Shown here: positions 45,122 to 55,976 of the stretch, piece after piece | Numbering within the stretch: the stretch's first letter is position 1 | Layout of the letters: each line of letters begins with the position of its first letter | DNA from: Rhodosorus marinus CCMP1338 | Taxonomy: Eukaryota; Plantae; Rhodophyta | Length of the DNA stretch: 64,000 nt | Assembly (NCBI GenBank): GCA_029953675.1 | Contig: JAMWBK010000009.1 | Coordinates: 620,001-684,000 of the forward strand | Direction of reading: 5' to 3' | Notes under the pieces: generated by a model | The model's input: the letters and a program-made list of their open reading frames with translations, nothing else | The model's database searches: none | Told to the model about the DNA's origin: nothing | Made by a program: the position numbers and the translations under genes

Positions 45122-46086
45122 TCAGTGTTCTTCTTGATGGGAAATTGTGGTGAAGATCAACGTCCAGACGAAAGCGACAAGGTTGGCGAACAAGACTCTG
45201 TAACTGAGTGGAACTACGGAGAAGTTGACGAGCTGTGCAATCGGCCATAGCTTCCAGTTGGCAATTATCACCGTGACGATCTGATCCTTAATTTTCTTCA
45301 GGGCCGCCTTCACGTCGAATGTTTCAAGAAAAGTCATTCCGAACATCATCTGAGCGTTGAAAAATACTGCCCAAAGTAACTGTACAAGCACGAGAAGGAA
45401 AAGGGGAAAAATTGAGCAGATAGCCCACCGCACAAACCGCGATGCCCTTACGAGCGTCTCGAGTACCTGGTCAATGGCCATCTGCTTGACCGCTTTGAGA
45501 GCCACCATCCCTGGGAAAATCCGTTCCAGAAAACCAAACCACCCGTGTAGAAGTGGTGTTCCCACAAGGGTAAACCAGGCTGTAAGAGATGCCAGCCTTC
45601 TCAAGTCCAAGTCCTTCTCGGGGTCATCCTTCATCTCAATCCATTGTGCCATGTAGTCAGCGAGGGCCGTAAGTATCCCACCTGTGATCATCTTCGTTGT
45701 AAGCGGACCCCTCGCCAATAACTTTGCATCAGTAAAACCCACAAACCCAAAAAAAACACCACACTCCTCATCAGTTAGTCAATGAGACGACAAAAGCGGT
45801 GATTCAGCTCGCCAAGAAAAAGAAGATCTCAGCGTACCTTCCCATAGAGCGCCAGCAAGTTCCAATCCCAGGAGCTATCACCATCCTCATCAAACTCATC
45901 CCATTCGCCTTCATCGTAGAAACCACCAGGAGGCACAGGCGGATTGCCCTCAAAGTTCACCCGCACTAAATCAGACCTCCTGATAGCTACTCCACTCCCT
46001 CTTCGAGGTCGAATCTCTCTACCAACATTACTACCTCCTACTCTCAGACATGACTTATCAACACCCAAATTGATAAATCCATACAT
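45122..46086 (-). CDS. Mpv17/PMP22 family membrane protein with N-terminal transit peptide-like extension
   Basis: Exon 1 MYGFINLG...NLLALYGK| joins LLARGPLTTKMITGG; KMAIDQ, NWKLWPIAQLVNFSVVPLSYRVLFANLVAFVW. Confidence 0.88.
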
Positions 46087-47003: not shown

Positions 47004-49200
47004 TTAAGCTGGGAAGTAGAACAAGAAGTTCGGGATGTAGGGAGCGTGCGAGATTTCGTTATGCGCCATGTAGCCGTAATTGCCTTCTTTCTTCCGCAGT
47101 AACGGGAACTCATCAGCAACTACGGCTACATCGCGCATAACGAAATCTCGCACGCTCCCTACATCCCGAACTTCAAAATTCCCATTTTCAAAACATTTCA
47201 ATAAAATGTATTCCTTGGTGACCACATCCAGCTTGTTGCGCTTAGCAGCCGGTACGTATCCGATCACGCGGCAACCAAACGGATACAGGTTGTTCAAAGT
47301 ATCTCTTTCCCAGAACGCAATCTCTACAGGACTTGCGCTCTGTCCTCTCCGGGTCCGTGAGTTTATAATCCTCTCCACGAGCTGAACGGTGTGCGGCCAA
47401 CTTGCGTGCGACGCTCCAGCGTCGCACAACATCGACCTCATTAACTGTAATATTGTCGAATTTACCAGTTCTGCAATACCATTGCACTCTGGCGAATGAG
47501 GTGGCGCTGGATCCCATTCTACCCCTATTTTTCTCAACAATGGCTTCAACTTCTCGAACTCCCCACCGTTGTCACAATGTAGAACCTTCACAAAACGCCC
47601 GGTCTTCCTCTGGAACCAATTGCAATAATCTAGGAAAGTATCCTCAACGTCGCTCTTCTTCACGATTGGAAAAACTCTCAGATGCCTCGATTTCTCATCG
47701 GTGAAAGTCACGAATTGAGAGAAGTTTCCCGTGCCTGATAGCGGTAAAGCCCCACAGACATCGCTGTTTGTTATGTCTGCAACCTCCAGCGCATGCATCA
47801 ACCTGCCCCTGCGCGGCTTTCTTTTCATCTTTGTCCTCAGACAAGTGAGACATTTCGCGCCTGCATCTAACGTCCTTTTGGCCGTTTGGTCTTCCGTGTG
47901 GCCGGTGTGAAAATGGGCATCCGATAGAAAATGACAAACATGTTCTTCTAGTGTTATATCTCTGTCTAAGATATAACCCCGTTTGCTGTTCACTATCCTC
48001 GCGAGCATTCCACCTGTCTTATCATCAACGCGTCCACCTTTCCGATCGAAAGTGACTCGGCACCCCTTTTCTGTCGGCTGCATCAGGGACACATAATTGC
48101 CAGTCAGTTCCGAAGAATATTTGACCCTTGACAAACCCAACTTCCGAACTCCCACATCCGTTACTACCTGGAACGATACGGTTCCCTCGTGGGTGCACGA
48201 GATTTCACGCCTATCCGCCAACACGACCTTGGACTCCATCACCGGATCCAGGTTATCGAAGAACTCTCGCTCCCCGAATATGTGTGCGGATGCTCCACTG
48301 TCAACCACTAAGTCATTCTTGTCAGTAGGGCCTCCAATGGCTAGGAGTGTGAATTTCTCCCTGCTCCCACTTGCATTAAATTTTGTAGGGCCGTTGTGGC
48401 CCGTCGACTGCTTCCCCCTCTTGTTCCGATGCTGTTTCAGTTGATGACAATTTCGCTTAAAATGCCCGACCCTCCCACAGCCGAAGCACGTCTTACAGTC
48501 CCGAAGTAGATATCCTTCGCGTCGACATTTGTGGCACGCTCATTCGCTCTCCCTCACCCTCATGTAGAGCAGAGTTGGCGTCCTTTCCGCGTTAGAATCC
48601 GGGTCTACGTCAATCGCCGCTTCTCCCTTGTGCCTGGACTGGATAATCTCCCAGGTCAAGTCGTCCTCTGGCTGCGCTGAAGACTGGCTGGTCCTGCGAC
48701 CGATCCCGCAACACATTCTGTACGTGTATTAATCGGTCGCTGGCGTCGTACGTTGTCCCTGCAATGGAATAGAGCTCGGCGTACCGTGCCTCCAACCATT
48801 GGAAAACATCGTACAATGATTCTACTAACTTTGCTTTCCTATGGTACAGTTGGAAAGAAAGTTGGGCTTCGTTCGTCCGCGTCCGATTGGTATATGTTTT
48901 CTCGAACTTTTCCCATATCATCCTGGGGTCTGTCTCTTCAGCCACCGTTAGTTGTTGTGTGACCCCAAGCGTGAGTTTTATACACGCTCCGACTAGTGAC
49001 AACCGATCCTTATCAGCAATCTCCTCCTCGTCCCTAAAAACCAGTTTCGTCAACCGACAAGCGTGACTTGACATGAGTTGCCTTCGTGCGACCCTAGCTG
49101 GGGGGGACAATCCCCAGCATTTCCCTCCATGATTCCTCCTTACAACTACAAATATCAACACCTGTCCTCTACACAGCTCCAACGTGAGCTGGGCTCATAA
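47004..49200 (-). mobile_element. Ty1/copia retrotransposon remnant: disrupted gag (two zinc knuckles), protease and integrase; truncated before RT
   Basis: CHKCRREGYLLRDC/CFGCGRVGHFKRNC, VDSGASAHI, integrase SDVCG..FVTFTDEKSR..LHCDNGGEF..APPHSPECNGIAE. Copia-type gttatgagcccag leader near 49200. Confidence 0.93.
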
Positions 49201-49944
49201 CATGTTAAACAAAACTAGGTCTATGAGTCTTGTATCGTCGGCTCATCCAACAATCCAACCCCCCGTTCTCATGTACACGCGAGGATCCTTTTTCAGCTGC
49301 TGGAAACCCTTATTCTGCAGGTCTTTTGTAAGTTGATCGTGCCAGGTCCTAGCAGACTGCTTCAGTCCGTATAATCCCTTCCGCACTTACACACACATCC
49401 TTGTGCACCCTCATATCCGTGTAGCGGTTCCAAGTATACATCATCATGCAACTGGCTGTAGAGGTATGCCGTCTAATTATCAAAACTGTAGTACTTCCCA
49501 GTTATATATCTATTTCGTAATTGTAGTACCTCACAGTGATATTTTGATGTTGAGACGGCATACCTCTACGTCCAGTTGCACGATGACGTATACGTTGAAC
49601 CGCCACAAGTCGGATGGATCGATGGTAGCAGGTAGATATCAGGGTGCACAAGGATTTGTATGCAAATTGCGGAAGCAATTATATGCGGACTGAAGCAGTC
49701 TGCTAGGACACGGCACGATCAACTTACAAAAGACCTGCGGAATAAGGGTTTCCAAAGAGCTGAAAAAGGATCCTTGTGTGTACATGAGAACGGGGGTTGT
49801 ATTTGTTGGATGAGCTGACGATATACACTCATAGACCTAGTTTTGTTTAACATGTTATGAGCCCAGCTCACGGTTGAGCTGTGTAGAAGACAGGTGTTGA
49901 TATTTGTAGCTGTAAGGAGGAATCATGGAAGGAGATGCTGGGGA
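49111..49944. repeat. ~830-bp fold-back (long inverted repeat) made of a copia RT fragment joined to the PBS/gag start
   Basis: 49111-~49495 is the reverse complement of ~49530-49944, with scattered mismatches and one ~25-bp indel. The right arm encodes FDVETAYL..., GLKQSART and EKDPCVY..ADD. Confidence 0.9.
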
Positions 49945-50899: not shown

Positions 50900-53800
50900 C
50901 AACAATCATGGGTTCATTTCTGGGTGATCCCTTTTTCAGACGTCTGCGCCCCACCGTTGGAACTTCTTTCCTATAGGTCTCGGCTTTGGAACCTTGCTGA
51001 GTTCCGTCGATGTACTCTCAATCCAACTTGGCCTGCTAAGCAGCGCTTGTCTTACTTGCTGCTTCCAGGAAGTTACACGTTTCCCACCGCCAATATTGTT
51101 CTTGTAAAATCCTATCCCGAGCATTTCAGCACATTCTCATTGAGCTTTGTGTTCTGGTGCTCGCAAGAGACTGGTTGCCCTCGTCCCTACCTGAGTCAAC
51201 CAACGGCAGCGGATTTAAGAGAGTTTCCAGAACCGCGTTGGAATCCACGTCTTTGTGGAATAGTCTCTCTTTGGTAAAGTCCTTCACAGTACGCAAACGA
51301 ACTGGTTTTCCCTCTGGCGTTCGTGTGTACGCCGTGCGGGACCTCATCGCGCTTACCTCGTCGATGTGCTTTAGACCGTGCTTGAGTACCAGCGTCATCA
51401 GTGCGCTTACGCGAAGGTAGACACCAACCAAACGTCGGACCTCGTACCGATTCTCGCAGGGAGCATACAGTTTGTCAATTTCATCCTGGAGTATTCTGAA
51501 CCATCCAACAATAACATGATCTTCGTATTTGGTCATCCATTCCACCCCGGTTGGGCCTCCGTCTTTCCACATCCCCAGATACTCAAGGGTGGGCTCCAAC
51601 AAAAGCTCCACAGGCGCGAGGAAGTTTATCTGGGGCGCCAAGTACACTCGTTCATCGATGACCTCCGTCCCGTCCAGCTCTTCATCAAATTCCCAACTAC
51701 TGTCCTCCTTCCAATCTCCGGCTCGATTCTTCCATTCAAAGATTGCTTGCCTCGCCCGATCGACAGCCTCCTGTACTTCCAGAGGAATCTGAAAGTAGAA
51801 AACGGATGTCCAGAAGAAGGGATCTTGTAAAGATCAGCTGACTCTGTATGCGGCATACTCCTCAGCTTGACTGCGACGCTATTCCGATTCCTTACCTTTC
51901 CCCAATCGACGTTTTTTTCCATCGCGTCGACGAAACCTAACAAGTTGTCACGAACCAAGTTTTCCAGTTCGGGATCAATTCTCCCAAAGATCTGCTGGTC
52001 GCTTAAGCGTTCAGCAACGTCCGCAGGGCCTCGGAGTTTCTTCGGCATGTCCATGAACATAAGATCTAATTGGGTCCTCGAGAATGTCAGCAAAAGGTGC
52101 TGTAGAGGAAACAGAAGATGGGATAAGCCTTTTACGCATACCTGACCTATAGCCGCCTAAACTCTCTGTACCATCGCCGTTCACAATCCTGTCCACCTCC
52201 AGTCTAAAGCGTTCTTCGTGGTCCAAACCAGGAATCCAGTCAGCGTCAGTGGATGTGCGTGGGTTGGATATCTCATCCTTCCCACCAGTGTGACGGGATA
52301 CAGAATTTACGAGTGCTCTCGTCAGCGACCATTTTGTCTGGTTTCGAAGAGCAGAGCAGCCACATCTAGTTTAGAGACTAGGTCCTGGGCCTTATTTGAT
52401 GACTCCCGGAAGCAGAAGCCTTCTGTATCACCTACCAGAGAGTTCAGCATAGTGTTCACGCCAAACTTTCGATCGGATTGAAGAAGCCGATGGGAGCGCA
52501 ACCGCCTCTGACTTGATTCCTTGGCTTTCCGTCTCCAGCTTTGCTCTTCCACGTTGTGAACCATCGTATACAGAATAACGTTGTTGAACATGATCGAATC
52601 ACTCTGGATGTGATGCGTCTCTGGCAGTCTACAACCTAAGCGCAAAGCCTCAGCAAGGAACCAGAGGCCGGTTCAGTTCAACCCGGGGAACGAATCGAAG
52701 TATGGCGTTTCCCACCTTGTAGACCCAAATTGAAGGTAAGAAAGTCATTGATGTCATCGCGGAAACCTATCGCAAGGCTTTGATGCCCAGCGATGCCCGC
52801 GAGGATCTCGTCTCCCGTTCGAACGTATCGGATTCGGACAAACTCAGATTTCCGTTCGCCAGGTTCGGATGAATTGGTCGCGTCCTTCTCGCAGTACTCG
52901 CCTAGCTTTCGAGCTTCGACATCGACCTGGTGAAGGTATATATTGCGCAGCAGTCGCGCGAGGCCATTTCCTCTGATCTCGTCCGTGCACAGTCCTTTTC
53001 TTACGTAGTCGAGCAGCATGGCTGTGACTAACTCGTCGTGAATCACAGTTCCTAAAAAGCACCAACGAGACGATCGGGTGTTATCCTCTCGGAAGTTTCC
53101 GCATTCTCTTCACGCAGACGGAGAGCCGGGCAGATCATGTCTTCCGCAACCGCGCGAGCAAAGCGTTATGCTCACGAAAGGCAGGCGGATGAACACTGTG
53201 TCAATGGTACTGGAGACTGGGGACGTAGTAAAAAGTCAACTCCTCAGCCGCATAGGCTGCATGAGACATGTCATTTTGACAGACCACTGGCCAAGAGTTG
53301 AGTTCTGAATACGTGCTCCTCACGTACAAATGACCGTTGCGTTCGTATCCAACTTGAACTCTGAGCTGGACGTAACCCCATGGTTCGCGAGGGGATTCTT
53401 ACCCAGTGCAGATTCTAAGACAGACTCCTTCATGTCACGGAAGAAGTGAGATGACAAATTCCACTTGATCATCCAGTACACTCCGGTCCAAGAATGCCTG
53501 ATCTGGAAAAGCCCGGCATGGGTACCATAACCTGGTCTGTCACCGCACGAAGTATCCTCAAAAGTGGGGTCGAAGATCCCGCAGAGGACCTGGGCGGGAA
53601 CAGCAAGAACGATGCAATATCTTGAGCTCTCCATTCTGGAGCACGCGAGTCTCCAACGGGGTCCATTCAGGGGGTTGCTTCTCCATATTATTGCTTTGAA
53701 CATGAGATTACCTCTCGAAGAGCCTCAGCGACAACCAAATCCTCGTGTTCAATGACAGCTTCTTCCAAGAAGTCATAGTCAGAAAGGTCAAGAACGGATG

Positions 53801-54524
53801 GTACCTGGATCAAGCTGGGTTCAGAGAATTCGTAGCCGCCGCTTTGTATCCTTTCTGAAAGCTTGAGAAGCTTCTTCTCAAGGGATAGAAGTGCTGCTTC
53901 ATCCAATACCTTGCTATAGAACAGGAAGTCATTTCAACATGAGCGTAGAATCATTCTTCTAAGCAGAGATCCAGCAGACTTACTCCTCTCTCAGCTTGAG
54001 GCGCTCTAAAGCTCTTTTCAAGGCTTGCTCATCCAACTGTGATAGAACATTTGCATACTTTCCATTGTCCAGTAGAGTGTAGTCGTATGGGTACCTTGGC
54101 TCTTCAGGCAACGCTTCCTTTAACTTTGAGAATTCCAGCTCCCGGGCGCGATTCTTTCTCTCAACTTGCTTCCAGTTCTCAACGAGCAGCTCGAGATCCT
54201 CGCTTAAGAGAAAAAAACGTTTGAAACGAAACAGAGAGTAGTTCCTGTTTAAGGGTCTCGGTCTCGTTGTTGGATGATCGGATCCGCAAATCTCGAGAAC
54301 GAGAAAAATAAATATACCAACCTCACTCGCTCCCGAGCTTCACGAGAAGCATTTGGTACCCGAATCCTTCCAGCCAAAGCCTCGATGGATTCAGGGAGCG
54401 GAATCTGCTTTGGTGCTGGTTCTAGAACACGTCGTTGATATGGTCTAGCGGGTGTTTTTGAGCTTCCGCGTGATATCTGACTCAATCCTCGGACCAGACG
54501 AGGCAACCGAGTTCCAGTTCTCAT
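50900..54524 (-). CDS. Nucleus-encoded group II intron maturase (RT0-7 plus domain X), split by about 8 or more spliceosomal introns; 3' end approximate
   Basis: NGKYANVL (RT0); LLKLSERIQSGGYEF; ALRE|VLCGIFDPTFEDTSCGDRPGYGTHAGLFQIRHSW (RT2); LARLLRNIYLHQVD; IRYVRTGDEILAGIAG (RT5, YADD lost); domain X INFLAP..IVGWF..YLRVSALMTLVLKH. In-frame GT-AG introns at 53983-53914, 53711-53590 and 51895-51789. Confidence 0.85.
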
Positions 54525-55289: not shown

Positions 55290-55700
55290 TCAGTACAGTG
55301 TATCATCCGCAGACGGATGGGCAGACTGAGCGTATGAACCAGACCTTGGAGACTTACCTACGACGCAACTCAACAACGAGTTGGGCGGAAGACCTTCCTG
55401 TAGCAGAATTGGCATGCAACCGGCAGATTTCGGAGGCAACCCAAGTTTCTCCGTTTGAGCTGCTCTATGGGAAGAATCCGGCCTTACCACATGACCTCAA
55501 CTTATCTGACAACAGCAATACCAGGACTCCATTACCCGAAGCGGCAAAAATACTTCTACGACGTCAGAAAGACCAACAAGCCTTAGTCCAGGGTAGCCTA
55601 CGCTATGCCCAAGAACGCCAACGCTTCCACTATGATCGAGGAAAGAAGGACCTTCACTTCAACGCGTGGACTGGTTACTGGATTCACAGCGAAAAAAAAG
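55290..55700 (+). mobile_element. Ty3/gypsy integrase C-terminal remnant
   Basis: YHPQTDGQTERMNQTLETYLR..W..LP.AE...SPFELLYG. Confidence 0.9.
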
Positions 55701-55724
55701 AAGAAAAGACCGATAGTTCAGTTA

Positions 55725-55976
55725 TCACTTCAAACCGGGTGAATATGTGCTTCTGTCAACACAAAAAACACACTTCTTGCAGTACAATTTGTGTTCTCGT
55801 ACTTTTGTGAAGACGAGATCCAGGTGCTTCCAATGCGCGTTCAGGTTCGGGGAGTAGACTATAATGTCATGAAAAAAGATGCAACAAAAACCCCTAGCTC
55901 CTCGAAAAATGAGTCTTTCAGAAGTCTGGTAAATACCGTCGATGCATTTGTGAGGCCAAACGGCATAACGAGCCAT
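55725..55976 (-). mobile_element. Ty3/gypsy reverse transcriptase remnant (opposite orientation to the adjacent integrase piece)
   Basis: FFHDIIVYSPNLNAHWKHLDLVF...LYCKKCVF resembles YLDDILIYS...H..HL..V...L...KC.F. Confidence 0.75.

What the first reader, a model, noticed from the sequence alone, without database searches (positions are those of the whole stretch)
50900..54524. Domesticated nuclear group II intron maturase gene with spliceosomal introns, dead RT site and mitochondrial-type presequence
Seen in sequence: scattered minus-strand ORF pieces join through in-frame GT-AG introns (e.g. 53983-53914, 53711-53590, 51895-51789) into one protein. It has the ordered group II intron-encoded-protein motifs RT0-RT7 and domain X. 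The catalytic YADD reads TGDE and the PQG motif is lost, while RNA-binding domain X is kept. The first ~33 residues (MRTGTRLPRLVRGLSQISRGSSKTPARPYQRRV) are Arg/Ser-rich with no acidic residues. No group II intron RNA ends were recognised around it. Established: land plants have nucleus-encoded maturases (nMAT1-4) that splice mitochondrial group II introns in trans, and several unicellular red algal organelle genomes are rich in group II introns. Inference: this is an independently or anciently transferred maturase acting as a trans splicing factor in a red alga. Spliceosomal introns and an acquired targeting peptide argue against a NUMT or other dead insertion. I know of no characterised red algal equivalent but cannot check the literature here.
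Basis: partly seen in the sequence, partly recalled or inferred. Interest (0 to 1): 0.88.

Follow-up and report, generated by a model that had tools for sequence, protein, structure and literature searches.

The report
Nuclear dead-RT maturase gene, red alga
A nuclear gene of the red alga Rhodosorus marinus encodes an expressed, selectively maintained relative of group II intron maturases with a degenerate reverse-transcriptase active site; it probably helps splice organelle introns, a job so far described only for plant nuclear maturases.

Summary
Window 54524-50936 (minus strand) is a 10-exon, 9-intron gene. Its translation equals the R. marinus protein KAJ8902244.1 (NDN08_006651, "hypothetical protein", 828 aa). 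A fully spliced transcript from another strain confirms every junction and the N-terminal presequence.

Pfam does not detect the protein, but it is a group II intron-encoded-protein homologue. Profile comparison to mitochondrial intron proteins gives probability 100%, E 1.7e-47, spanning RT0 to domain X. The predicted fold matches LtrA and bacterial maturases.

YADD reads TGDE, PQG reads RGNG, the RT3 Asp is Asn, and there is no endonuclease domain. No group II intron RNA lies nearby.

Against another strain dN/dS is 0.35 overall and 0.19 in domain X. Exons are 91% identical, introns 79%. Orthologues at about 36-38% identity occur in two unidentified eukaryotes and share an identical phase-0 intron.

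It is not an nMAT3 orthologue. The closest named relatives are streptophyte mitochondrial intron proteins. Mitochondrial targeting and a trans-splicing role are inferred, not shown. One caveat: the protein is acidic (pI 6.0), unlike basic maturases. I found no paper describing a red-algal nuclear maturase. Verdict: a new member of a known kind, of moderate to high interest.

The parts
50936..54524 (-). Whole coding region (ATG to stop) of the nuclear maturase-like gene NDN08_006651. It has 10 exons and 9 GT-AG introns and encodes 828 aa.
   Evidence: The spliced translation is identical to KAJ8902244.1. All junctions are confirmed by transcript-derived protein P0007.
54322..54524 (-). Exon 1. 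It holds the presequence-like N-terminus, residues 1-34 at 54524-54423 (MRTGTRLPRLVRGLSQISRGSSKTPARPYQRRVL), with no acidic residue, 10 K/R in the first 40 residues and an amphipathic stretch at residues 9-19.
   Evidence: Composition and hydrophobic moment 0.93, reached by 1.4% of shuffles. The N-terminus is conserved in the other strain and is presequence-like in orthologue P0164.
52553..54078 (-). Region coding for the RT-like fingers/palm (residues 110-410, RT0-RT7). It is spread over exons 2-6 and interrupted by introns 2-5.
   Evidence: hhalign to mitochondrial intron proteins. phmmer to LtrA gives 4e-8. AlphaFold2 pLDDT is mostly above 85 here, and Foldseek TM is 0.76 to bacterial maturase RT domains.
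53458..53460 (-). Codon for Asn252, at the position of the catalytic Asp of RT3 (WNLS versus consensus F/EFDI).
   Evidence: hhalign columns. The sequence was read directly.
52963..52974 (-). RGNG at the position of the RT4 motif PQG(S).
   Evidence: hhalign columns. The sequence was read directly.
52807..52818 (-). TGDE at the position of the catalytic YADD (RT5), in the context FVRIRYVRTGDEILAGIAG versus mitochondrial YV+VRYVRYADDFLLGI.
   Evidence: The orthologues read NGPE (P0164) and NGGE (L001).
51282..51644 (-). Domain X (thumb/maturase domain), residues 620-740, in exon 9. It is the most conserved part of the protein.
   Evidence: hhalign. Orthologue fragment P0017 passes the Pfam Intron_maturas2 gathering score, 28.2 against 20.8 bits. 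Between strains it is 93% identical with dN/dS 0.19.
51789..51895 (-). Intron 8 (phase 0, between K571 and I572). Its position and phase are shared with the orthologues in L001 and L003.
51112..51190 (-). Intron 9 (phase 1). It was missing from my first model and is retained in frame in some transcript isoforms of the other strain.
54203..54321 (-). Intron 1 (GTTGGT...AAG, phase 2). It is retained in some transcript isoforms, which then start at an internal Met.

Best explanation
This is a domesticated, nucleus-encoded descendant of a mitochondrial-type group II intron-encoded protein (RT/maturase). The gene was transferred to the nucleus long ago. It gained nine spliceosomal introns and an N-terminal organelle presequence, lost its endonuclease domain and its polymerase active-site residues, and kept the RT-like fingers/palm scaffold and domain X. 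The most likely mechanism (inferred) is as follows. The protein is imported into the mitochondrion. There it acts in trans as a splicing cofactor for the few ORF-less, and possibly trans-spliced (nad5), group II introns of the Rhodosorus minicircular mitochondrial genome, as plant nMAT1-4 do. Shown here: gene structure, expression, homology, loss of catalytic residues, purifying selection, conservation in at least two other eukaryotes with shared intron positions, and absence of a flanking intron RNA. Inferred: the import compartment, RNA binding and the splicing role.
For: Gene model and identity: the spliced ORF equals KAJ8902244.1 on a 1.83 Mb R. marinus contig. Expression and splicing: MMETSP isoform P0007 confirms all 9 junctions. 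Homology: hhalign probability 100%, E 1.7e-47, over residues 110-756 against mitochondrial intron proteins that themselves hit RVT_1 and Intron_maturas2; PDB phmmer to LtrA gives 4e-8; the Foldseek top match is LtrA in its RNP, and maturase RT domains match with TM 0.76. Degenerate site: TGDE, RGNG and N252, with NGPE and NGGE in the orthologues. No endonuclease domain: the C-terminal tail 757-828 is unaligned and has no Cys. No intron RNA. Selection: against genomic contigs of another strain, exons are 91.2% and introns 79.2% identical, indels are almost all in introns, no stops occur, and dN/dS is 0.35 over 660 codons (X 0.19, RT 0.32). Age: orthologues at 36-38% identity in two other taxa share an identical phase-0 intron 8, and L001 also shares the phases of introns 5, 6 and 7. 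Mitochondrial affinity: the best named relatives are the Coleochaete and Pellia mitochondrial intron proteins. The presequence features are as described. Context: R. marinus mitochondrial minicircles carry a handful of introns with no intron ORFs, and nad5 trans-splicing is suspected (PMC10250338).
Against: No localisation predictor or experiment was available. The presequence inference rests on composition and amphipathicity only. Stylonematophyceae plastid genomes hold 38-65 mostly group II introns (PMC5010701), so a plastid role is a real alternative. The protein is acidic (pI 6.0, net charge -11; RT region -17; insert 471-619 -18). Canonical mitochondrial intron proteins have pI about 10 (net about +50) and plant nMAT3 has pI 8.9, which is unexpected for a classical RNA-binding maturase. 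Pfam RVT_1 and Intron_maturas2 do not detect the protein itself even at E<=1. The introns of R. marinus organelles could not be inspected here.
Confidence: 0.6

Rival explanations
1. The protein is the same domesticated maturase but is imported into the plastid. There it serves the many plastid group II introns of Stylonematophyceae, possibly with dual targeting.
For: Stylonematophyceae plastid genomes are intron-rich, with 38-65 mostly group II introns (PMC5010701). Mitochondrial-type intron proteins also occur in some red-algal plastids (PMC8742464). The N-terminus is Ser/Thr- and Arg-rich, which also fits transit peptides.
Against: There is no Phe in the first 40 residues of the two Rhodosorus proteins. 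From my own knowledge, red-algal transit peptides usually carry an N-proximal Phe. A strongly amphipathic basic stretch lies at residues 6-19. The nearest named relatives are mitochondrion-encoded. All four plant nuclear maturases act in mitochondria (PMC10012718).
Confidence: 0.2
2. A maturase-derived protein has been recruited to a job other than classical intron binding. It might be a protein scaffold in an RNA-processing complex, or take part in minicircle RNA or DNA metabolism, with RNA contact limited to domain X and the basic helix 411-470.
For: The net charge is acidic, and a family-specific acidic insert lies between RT7 and X. The sequence is so diverged that Pfam misses it. Constraint persists on the catalytically dead RT scaffold, with dN/dS 0.32.
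Against: Domain X, the maturase domain, is the most constrained part (dN/dS 0.19) and keeps the conserved pattern of intron maturases. Plant nMATs and MatK also have degenerate RT domains yet act in splicing (named knowledge; PMC8393795).
Confidence: 0.15
3. A recent organelle-to-nucleus DNA insertion (NUMT/NUPT), a decaying pseudogene, or an annotation artefact.
For: R. marinus has abundant NUMTs (PMC10250338). Pfam finds nothing in the protein.
Against: Nine GT-AG introns are removed in transcripts. The 828-codon ORF is intact in three strains. dN/dS is 0.35 and exons are more conserved than introns. Orthologues share intron positions in other taxa. The CDS G+C of 0.505 is like the nuclear surroundings.
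Confidence: 0.02
4. An active or recently active mobile group II intron, or another retroelement, in the nucleus.
For: LTR-retrotransposon remnants flank the gene on both sides.
Against: No group II intron RNA domains are present. Catalytic residues are replaced and there is no endonuclease domain. Only one gene family member was seen for Rhodosorus in the exhaustive search.
Confidence: 0.01

Closest known systems
Land-plant nuclear-encoded maturases nMAT1-4 (Arabidopsis At1g30010, At5g46920, At5g04050, At1g74350)
   Same: They are nuclear genes derived from mitochondrial-type group II intron proteins. They have an N-terminal presequence, a degenerate RT active site and a retained domain X, and they stand free of any intron RNA. 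They act in trans on several mitochondrial introns, including trans-spliced nad1 (PMC10012718, PMC8393795).
   Different: The Rhodosorus protein is not an nMAT3 orthologue. An nMAT3 representative scores only E 4e-9 at 25% identity, against 6e-29 for a Coleochaete mitochondrial intron protein, and it sits elsewhere in the NJ tree. nMAT1, 2 and 4 were not compared. The Rhodosorus protein is acidic (pI 6.0 against 8.9 for nMAT3). It is invisible to Pfam, whereas nMAT3 hits Intron_maturas2 and, in most cases, RVT_1. It carries nine spliceosomal introns and a roughly 150-residue acidic insert before domain X. It comes from a different eukaryotic lineage, Rhodophyta.
Mitochondrion-encoded group II intron proteins of streptophytes (e.g. 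Coleochaete scutata YP_009710072, Pellia epiphylla maturase-like protein, MatR)
   Same: These are the best named sequence relatives. The RT0-RT7 and X order is the same, and they share the signature +VRYVR....L.GI.G around RT5 and a long linker between RT7 and X.
   Different: They are encoded inside organellar introns and are very basic. Most keep YADD and PQG, and many keep the D/En domain. The Rhodosorus gene is nuclear, intron-split and catalytically degenerate, and it lacks En.
LtrA of the Lactococcus lactis Ll.LtrB intron (PDB 5g2x, 8h2h) and bacterial maturase RT domains (5hhl, 5irg)
   Same: Sequence match of 4e-8. It is also the best fold match for the whole model, and the RT domain matches with TM 0.76 and rmsd about 3.3-3.6 A.
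   Different: LtrA is an active RT with DNA-binding and endonuclease domains, bound to its own intron. Identity to the Rhodosorus protein is only 12-20%.
Plastid MatK
   Same: It is a degenerate-RT maturase that retains domain X and serves several introns in trans.
   Different: MatK is organelle-encoded, lies inside the trnK intron and belongs to the chloroplast lineage. It was not found among the relatives examined here.

Membership tests
Group II intron-encoded protein (RT/maturase) superfamily | Ordered RT0-RT7 blocks with the group II-type N-terminal extension | tested here: met
   hhalign probability 100%, E 1.7e-47, residues 110-756. phmmer to LtrA 4e-8. Foldseek matches to maturase RT domains.
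Group II intron-encoded protein (RT/maturase) superfamily | Domain X (Pfam Intron_maturas2) | tested here: met
   Residues about 620-740 align to domain X of the mitochondrial intron proteins. Orthologue fragment P0017 scores 28.2 bits against a cut-off of 20.8. The Rhodosorus protein itself does not reach Pfam detection.
Group II intron-encoded protein (RT/maturase) superfamily | Catalytic carboxylates (RT3 Asp, YADD) and the PQG dNTP-binding motif | tested here: not met
   N252, TGDE and RGNG in this protein. The orthologues read NGPE and NGGE.
Group II intron-encoded protein (RT/maturase) superfamily | Encoded within domain IV of a group II intron RNA | tested here: not met
   No Rfam group II family match in the window. 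The ORF is split by nine spliceosomal introns.
Group II intron-encoded protein (RT/maturase) superfamily | C-terminal DNA-binding / HNH endonuclease domain (present in mobile members) | tested here: not met
   The alignment ends at residue 756. The tail 757-828 has no Cys and no HNH pattern.
Nuclear-encoded organellar maturases (functional kind; plant nMATs) | Nuclear, expressed, free-standing gene under selection | tested here: met
   The contig is 1.83 Mb. Spliced transcripts exist. dN/dS is 0.35.
Nuclear-encoded organellar maturases (functional kind; plant nMATs) | N-terminal mitochondrial targeting presequence and import | tested here: inconclusive
   Composition and amphipathicity fit. 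No predictor or localisation data were available.
Nuclear-encoded organellar maturases (functional kind; plant nMATs) | Required for splicing of organellar group II introns | not testable with these tools
   Only context is available: ORF-less mitochondrial introns and suspected nad5 trans-splicing in R. marinus (PMC10250338).
Plant nMAT clades (orthology) | Groups with nMAT3/nMAT4 or nMAT1/nMAT2 in a phylogeny | tested here: not met
   Tested for nMAT3 only. nMAT3 is a distant hit (E 4e-9) and is separate in the NJ tree, though deep bootstraps are below 40. nMAT1, 2 and 4 were not available, so they were not tested.
NUMT/NUPT pseudogene | Near identity to organelle DNA, neutral evolution and no processing | tested here: not met
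   Introns, transcripts, dN/dS 0.35 and orthologues at 36-38% identity. Direct comparison with R. marinus organelle DNA was not possible.

The most novel reading that the evidence does not exclude
Red algae independently domesticated mitochondrial-type maturases into a small nuclear family; one unidentified eukaryote expresses two such genes. The Rhodosorus-type member, now acidic and catalytically dead, may no longer work as a one-intron RNA chaperone. Instead it may act as a Prp8-like protein scaffold of a trans-acting organellar splicing complex. That complex would assemble ORF-less and fragmented (trans-spliced nad5) group II introns transcribed from separate mitochondrial minicircles. This would be a second, independent natural experiment in the path from a self-contained group II intron to splicing machinery supplied in trans.
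Probability: 0.12. Interest if true: 0.85.

Novelty: new member of a known kind. Interest (0 to 1): 0.62.

Why it matters
Nucleus-encoded maturases are the textbook case of a selfish intron's protein becoming a host splicing factor. So far they are documented only in the green lineage. A separately derived, ancient and constrained equivalent in red algae would show that this path is repeatable. It would also give the Stylonematophyceae, whose mitochondrial minicircles carry ORF-less introns and a split nad5, a concrete candidate for the missing splicing cofactor. The protein escapes Pfam and is annotated only as hypothetical, so similar genes are probably being missed in other algal genomes. 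The family profile built here could be used to find them.

Tried and rejected
- Pfam on the spliced protein and on orthologue P0164 found no family, even at E<=1. Homology had to be shown by phmmer against PDB, the exhaustive HMMER search, hhalign and fold comparison.
- The word-indexed homologue search found only Rhodosorus proteins. Run with the family alignment, it added only weak bacterial RTs and missed the known orthologues.
- My first gene model lacked the last intron. It was corrected from the annotated and transcript proteins.
- P0002 could not be located on any contig.
- A metagenome scan with the family alignment gave 192 pattern matches, none confirmed.
- The taxa behind JGI sample 3300016877 (P0164, P0177) and Logan runs SRR22824290/82 (P0017) could not be identified. 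A paper search for the run prefix returned an unrelated paper.
- The first tree script timed out. The NJ re-run resolves only the family itself; deep nodes have under 40% support.
- The exact boundaries of the L001 equivalent of intron 4 stayed ambiguous.
- The supplements of the genome paper mention neither this gene nor any maturase.
- NUMT, pseudogene and mobile-element readings were considered and rejected on introns, transcripts, selection and the absence of intron RNA.
Full report
**1. What is in the sequence**

The scattered minus-strand ORF pieces between 54524 and 50936 join through canonical GT-AG introns. My first nine-exon model was 99% identical to the protein that the word-indexed search returned: NCBI KAJ8902244.1, "hypothetical protein NDN08_006651 [Rhodosorus marinus]", 828 aa, on a 1.83 Mb contig. 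That protein showed one further 3' intron.

The corrected model has ten exons: 54524-54322, 54202-53984, 53913-53712, 53589-53403, 53051-52716, 52635-52436, 52337-52142, 52065-51896, 51788-51191 and 51111-50936. It translates exactly to the deposited protein.

The window is therefore nuclear DNA of the unicellular red alga R. marinus, whose chromosome-level assembly is described in PMC10250338. The CDS G+C is 0.505, like its surroundings.

**2. Expression and splicing**

The 90% cluster of the second hit holds 13 transcriptome-derived proteins (MMETSP) of another R. marinus strain.

- Isoform P0007 (829 aa, 87% identical) aligns without gaps across all nine junctions and begins with the same presequence.
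- Other isoforms retain intron 1, and so start at an internal Met, or retain intron 9 in frame.

The "no spliced transcript" refutation criterion is therefore not met.

**3. Homology**

Pfam finds nothing in the protein, even at E<=1. Other methods give clear results.

- phmmer against PDB sequences gives LtrA at 4e-8 and GsI-IIC RT at 4e-6, over residues 143-332.
- The exhaustive HMMER search of 1.84 billion representatives gives 728 hits at E<=1e-3.
- Outside Rhodosorus, the best full-length named hits are mitochondrion-encoded intron proteins: Coleochaete scutata (YP_009710072 at E 6e-29, and YP_009710066, whose cluster includes "maturase R"), a Zygnema "maturase-related" protein, and the Pellia epiphylla maturase-like protein.
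- A profile of the red-algal-type family (A3) against a profile of twelve such proteins (A5) gives hhalign probability 100%, E 1.7e-47, with 552 aligned columns over residues 110-756, from RT0 through domain X. Two A5 members that were scanned hit Pfam Intron_maturas2 above its cut-off; P0019 also hits RVT_1, while P0032 falls just below the RVT_1 cut-off.
- An AlphaFold2 model built on a 100-sequence alignment has mean pLDDT 69.9, mostly above 85 for residues 110-410 and 620-740.
- Its best Foldseek match is LtrA in its intron RNP (8h2h_D, E 1.9e-11, 761 columns). Next come the RT domains of Eubacterium rectale and Roseburia intestinalis maturases (TM 0.73-0.77, rmsd 3.1-4.6 A).

**4. State of the motifs**

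All of the following are read.

| Motif | Consensus | This protein |
|---|---|---|
| RT1 | IPK | VPS |
| RT3 | (E)FDI | WNLS (catalytic Asp becomes Asn252) |
| RT4 | GVPQGSVLSPLL | IRGNGLARLL |
| RT5 | RYVRYADDFLLGI | RYVRTGDEILAGI |
| RT7 | FLG | FNN |

- Domain X keeps its pattern: APxxxI..., WF/WY, ...LY/YY.C.N...V..LV.Y.R.SA..TL..KH.
- The alignment stops at residue 756. The tail 757-828 has no Cys or His-rich motif, so there is no D/En domain.
- The orthologues read NGPE (P0164) and NGGE (L001) at the YADD position. The loss of the polymerase site is therefore old and shared.

**5. No intron RNA**

Rfam finds nothing in the 64 kb window at gathering thresholds. At E<=5 across 48-58 kb it finds no group II family either.

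**6. Selection**

Two short genomic contigs from Logan assemblies (SRR32518362 and SRR32518360; L005 and L006) belong to the other Rhodosorus strain. They cover window 54583-53409 and 52901-51360.

- Exons are 91.2% identical and introns 79.2%.
- There are 16 gap columns in introns, against one 3-base indel in exons. No stop codons occur.
- Nei-Gojobori dN/dS is 0.35 over 660 codons (dS 0.19).
- By region, dN/dS is 0.19 for domain X, 0.32 for RT, 0.41 for the linker and 0.50 for the presequence.

The "dN/dS near 1" criterion is therefore not met. Domain X is the most constrained part, and the dead RT scaffold is still constrained.

**7. Relatives with the same architecture**

- P0164 (823 aa) is a complete MMETSP transcript. 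Its JGI copy L003 comes from sample 3300016877. It is 36% identical over the full length and has a presequence-like N-terminus.
- P0017 is an exon of a genomic contig (L001, Logan SRR22824290) of a third organism, 38% identical.
- All three genes carry a phase-0 intron at the identical alignment position...W(G/T)(K/E) | (I/L/V)P.E(V). It is intron 8 here, a retained GT...AG intron in L003, and GTGAGA...ATAG in L001.
- L001 also matches the phases of introns 5, 6 and 7.
- The nuclear gene with its introns therefore predates the split of these lineages.
- The taxa of L001 and L003 could not be determined. L003 and L004 have G+C 0.54-0.55 and GC3 about 0.64, so they are nuclear transcripts.
- The same sample expresses a second maturase-like protein, P0177 (710 aa). 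It hits Intron_maturas2 at 1e-15, reads FAED at the YADD position, and has a basic N-terminus.

**8. Relation to plant nMATs**

Hit P0126 of the exhaustive search was used as a query. It proved to be plant "nuclear intron maturase 3, mitochondrial".

- Against the Rhodosorus protein it scores only E 4e-9 at 25% identity, far below the mitochondrial intron proteins.
- In a bootstrapped NJ tree (469 columns), Rhodosorus plus P0164 form a clade with 100% support. P0177 joins it with 37% support.
- The group sits among mitochondrial-type intron proteins, and nMAT3 lies elsewhere. All deep nodes have support below 40%.
- The gene is thus not an nMAT3 orthologue. An independent transfer is favoured but not proven. 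nMAT1, 2 and 4 could not be retrieved.

**9. Targeting**

- Residues 1-34 have no acidic residue. The probability of that, given the protein's composition, is 0.003.
- Ten of the first 40 residues are K or R.
- The stretch at residues 9-19 has a helical hydrophobic moment of 0.93, reached by 1.4% of shuffles.
- The other strain and P0164 look similar, as does plant nMAT3.
- This fits a mitochondrial presequence but is not a localisation test.

**10. Biological context**

PMC10250338 reports that Stylonematophyceae mitochondrial genomes are minicircles with "only a handful of introns" and no intron ORFs. It also reports that nad5 is split between two minicircles, with transcript evidence for trans-splicing that PCR did not confirm.

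Neither that paper nor its supplements mention this gene or any maturase. Stylonematophyceae plastid genomes carry 38-65 mostly group II introns (PMC5010701), so a plastid role remains possible.

**11. An unexpected feature**

| Protein or region | pI | Net charge |
|---|---|---|
| This protein, whole | 6.0 | -11 |
| RT region | | -17 |
| Family-specific insert 471-619 | | -18 |
| Presequence (1-60) | | +9 |
| Helix 411-470 | | +9 |
| Domain X | | +2 |
| C-terminal tail (741-828) | | +6 |
| Mitochondrial intron proteins compared | about 10 | +52 to +80 |
| Plant nMAT3 | 8.9 | +13 to +15 |

This is the main internal argument against a classical maturase mode of RNA binding. It motivates the alternative of a scaffold-like role.

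**12. Literature**

Full-text searches found nuclear-encoded maturases described only for Viridiplantae (PMC10012718, PMC8393795, PMC8742464).

PMC8742464 reports no nuclear hits for intron proteins in Porphyridium at 1e-5. I found no description of a red-algal nuclear maturase, within the limits of the library searched.

**13. Verdict**

The gene is a real, ancient, constrained, nucleus-encoded maturase homologue with a degenerate RT site. It is a new member, probably independently derived, of the kind exemplified by plant nMATs.

Its compartment and its splicing function remain inferences. I put about 0.6 on a mitochondrial splicing cofactor and about 0.2 on a plastid one.

Noticed in passing
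window 47004-49182 (-): Remnants of a copia-type LTR retrotransposon lie just downstream of the gene. One 434-aa ORF hits Pol_BBD, integrase core (rve) and the retroviral SH3-like domain. A 190-aa ORF gives a weak copia gag hit.
   Followed up: partly
window 49260-49796: A roughly 540-bp nested palindrome: four concentric inverted-repeat pairs, 85-95% complementary, centred near 49514. It produced spurious MIR847 hits on both strands in the relaxed Rfam search. Its nature is unknown.
   Followed up: partly
window 55298-55810 (+): This ORF starts with ...HPQTDGQTERMNQTLETYLR, the motif typical of the C-terminal part of Ty3/gypsy-type integrase cores (my own knowledge). It gave no Pfam hit at 1e-3. 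It is probably a retrotransposon fragment just upstream of the maturase gene.
   Followed up: partly
window 45122-45742 (-): A 206-aa ORF of the Mpv17/PMP22 family (Pfam E 5.7e-20). It is probably an ordinary neighbouring gene or exon.
   Followed up: no
L004 1-3486 (JGI 3300016877): The unidentified organism that has the orthologue P0164 also expresses a second, basic maturase-like protein (P0177/P0023; Intron_maturas2 1e-15, no RVT_1 hit, FAED at the YADD position). The same transcript contig carries a downstream ORF with a sub-threshold Tim17-family hit (24.3 bits against a cut-off of 32.7). This suggests a small nuclear maturase family in that lineage.
   Followed up: partly
protein P0192/P0042 (Logan contigs, not in the window): This is another presequence-bearing maturase-like protein from an unknown eukaryote. 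It has a degenerate site (YADE, PRGS for PQG) and an acidic N-terminal region with repeated SNWRAAW motifs. Nuclear maturase-like genes may be more widespread among protists than is documented.
   Followed up: no
window 54203-54321 and 51112-51190 (introns 1 and 9): Transcript isoforms of the other strain retain intron 1 (giving an N-terminally truncated ORF without the presequence) or intron 9 (in frame in that strain, but with a stop codon in the window's allele). This could be assembly noise or regulated intron retention.
   Followed up: partly
window 53052-53402 (intron 4): Intron 4 is 351 nt long, three to five times the length of the other eight introns (70-122 nt). The Logan contigs do not cover it, so its conservation is unknown.
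   Followed up: no
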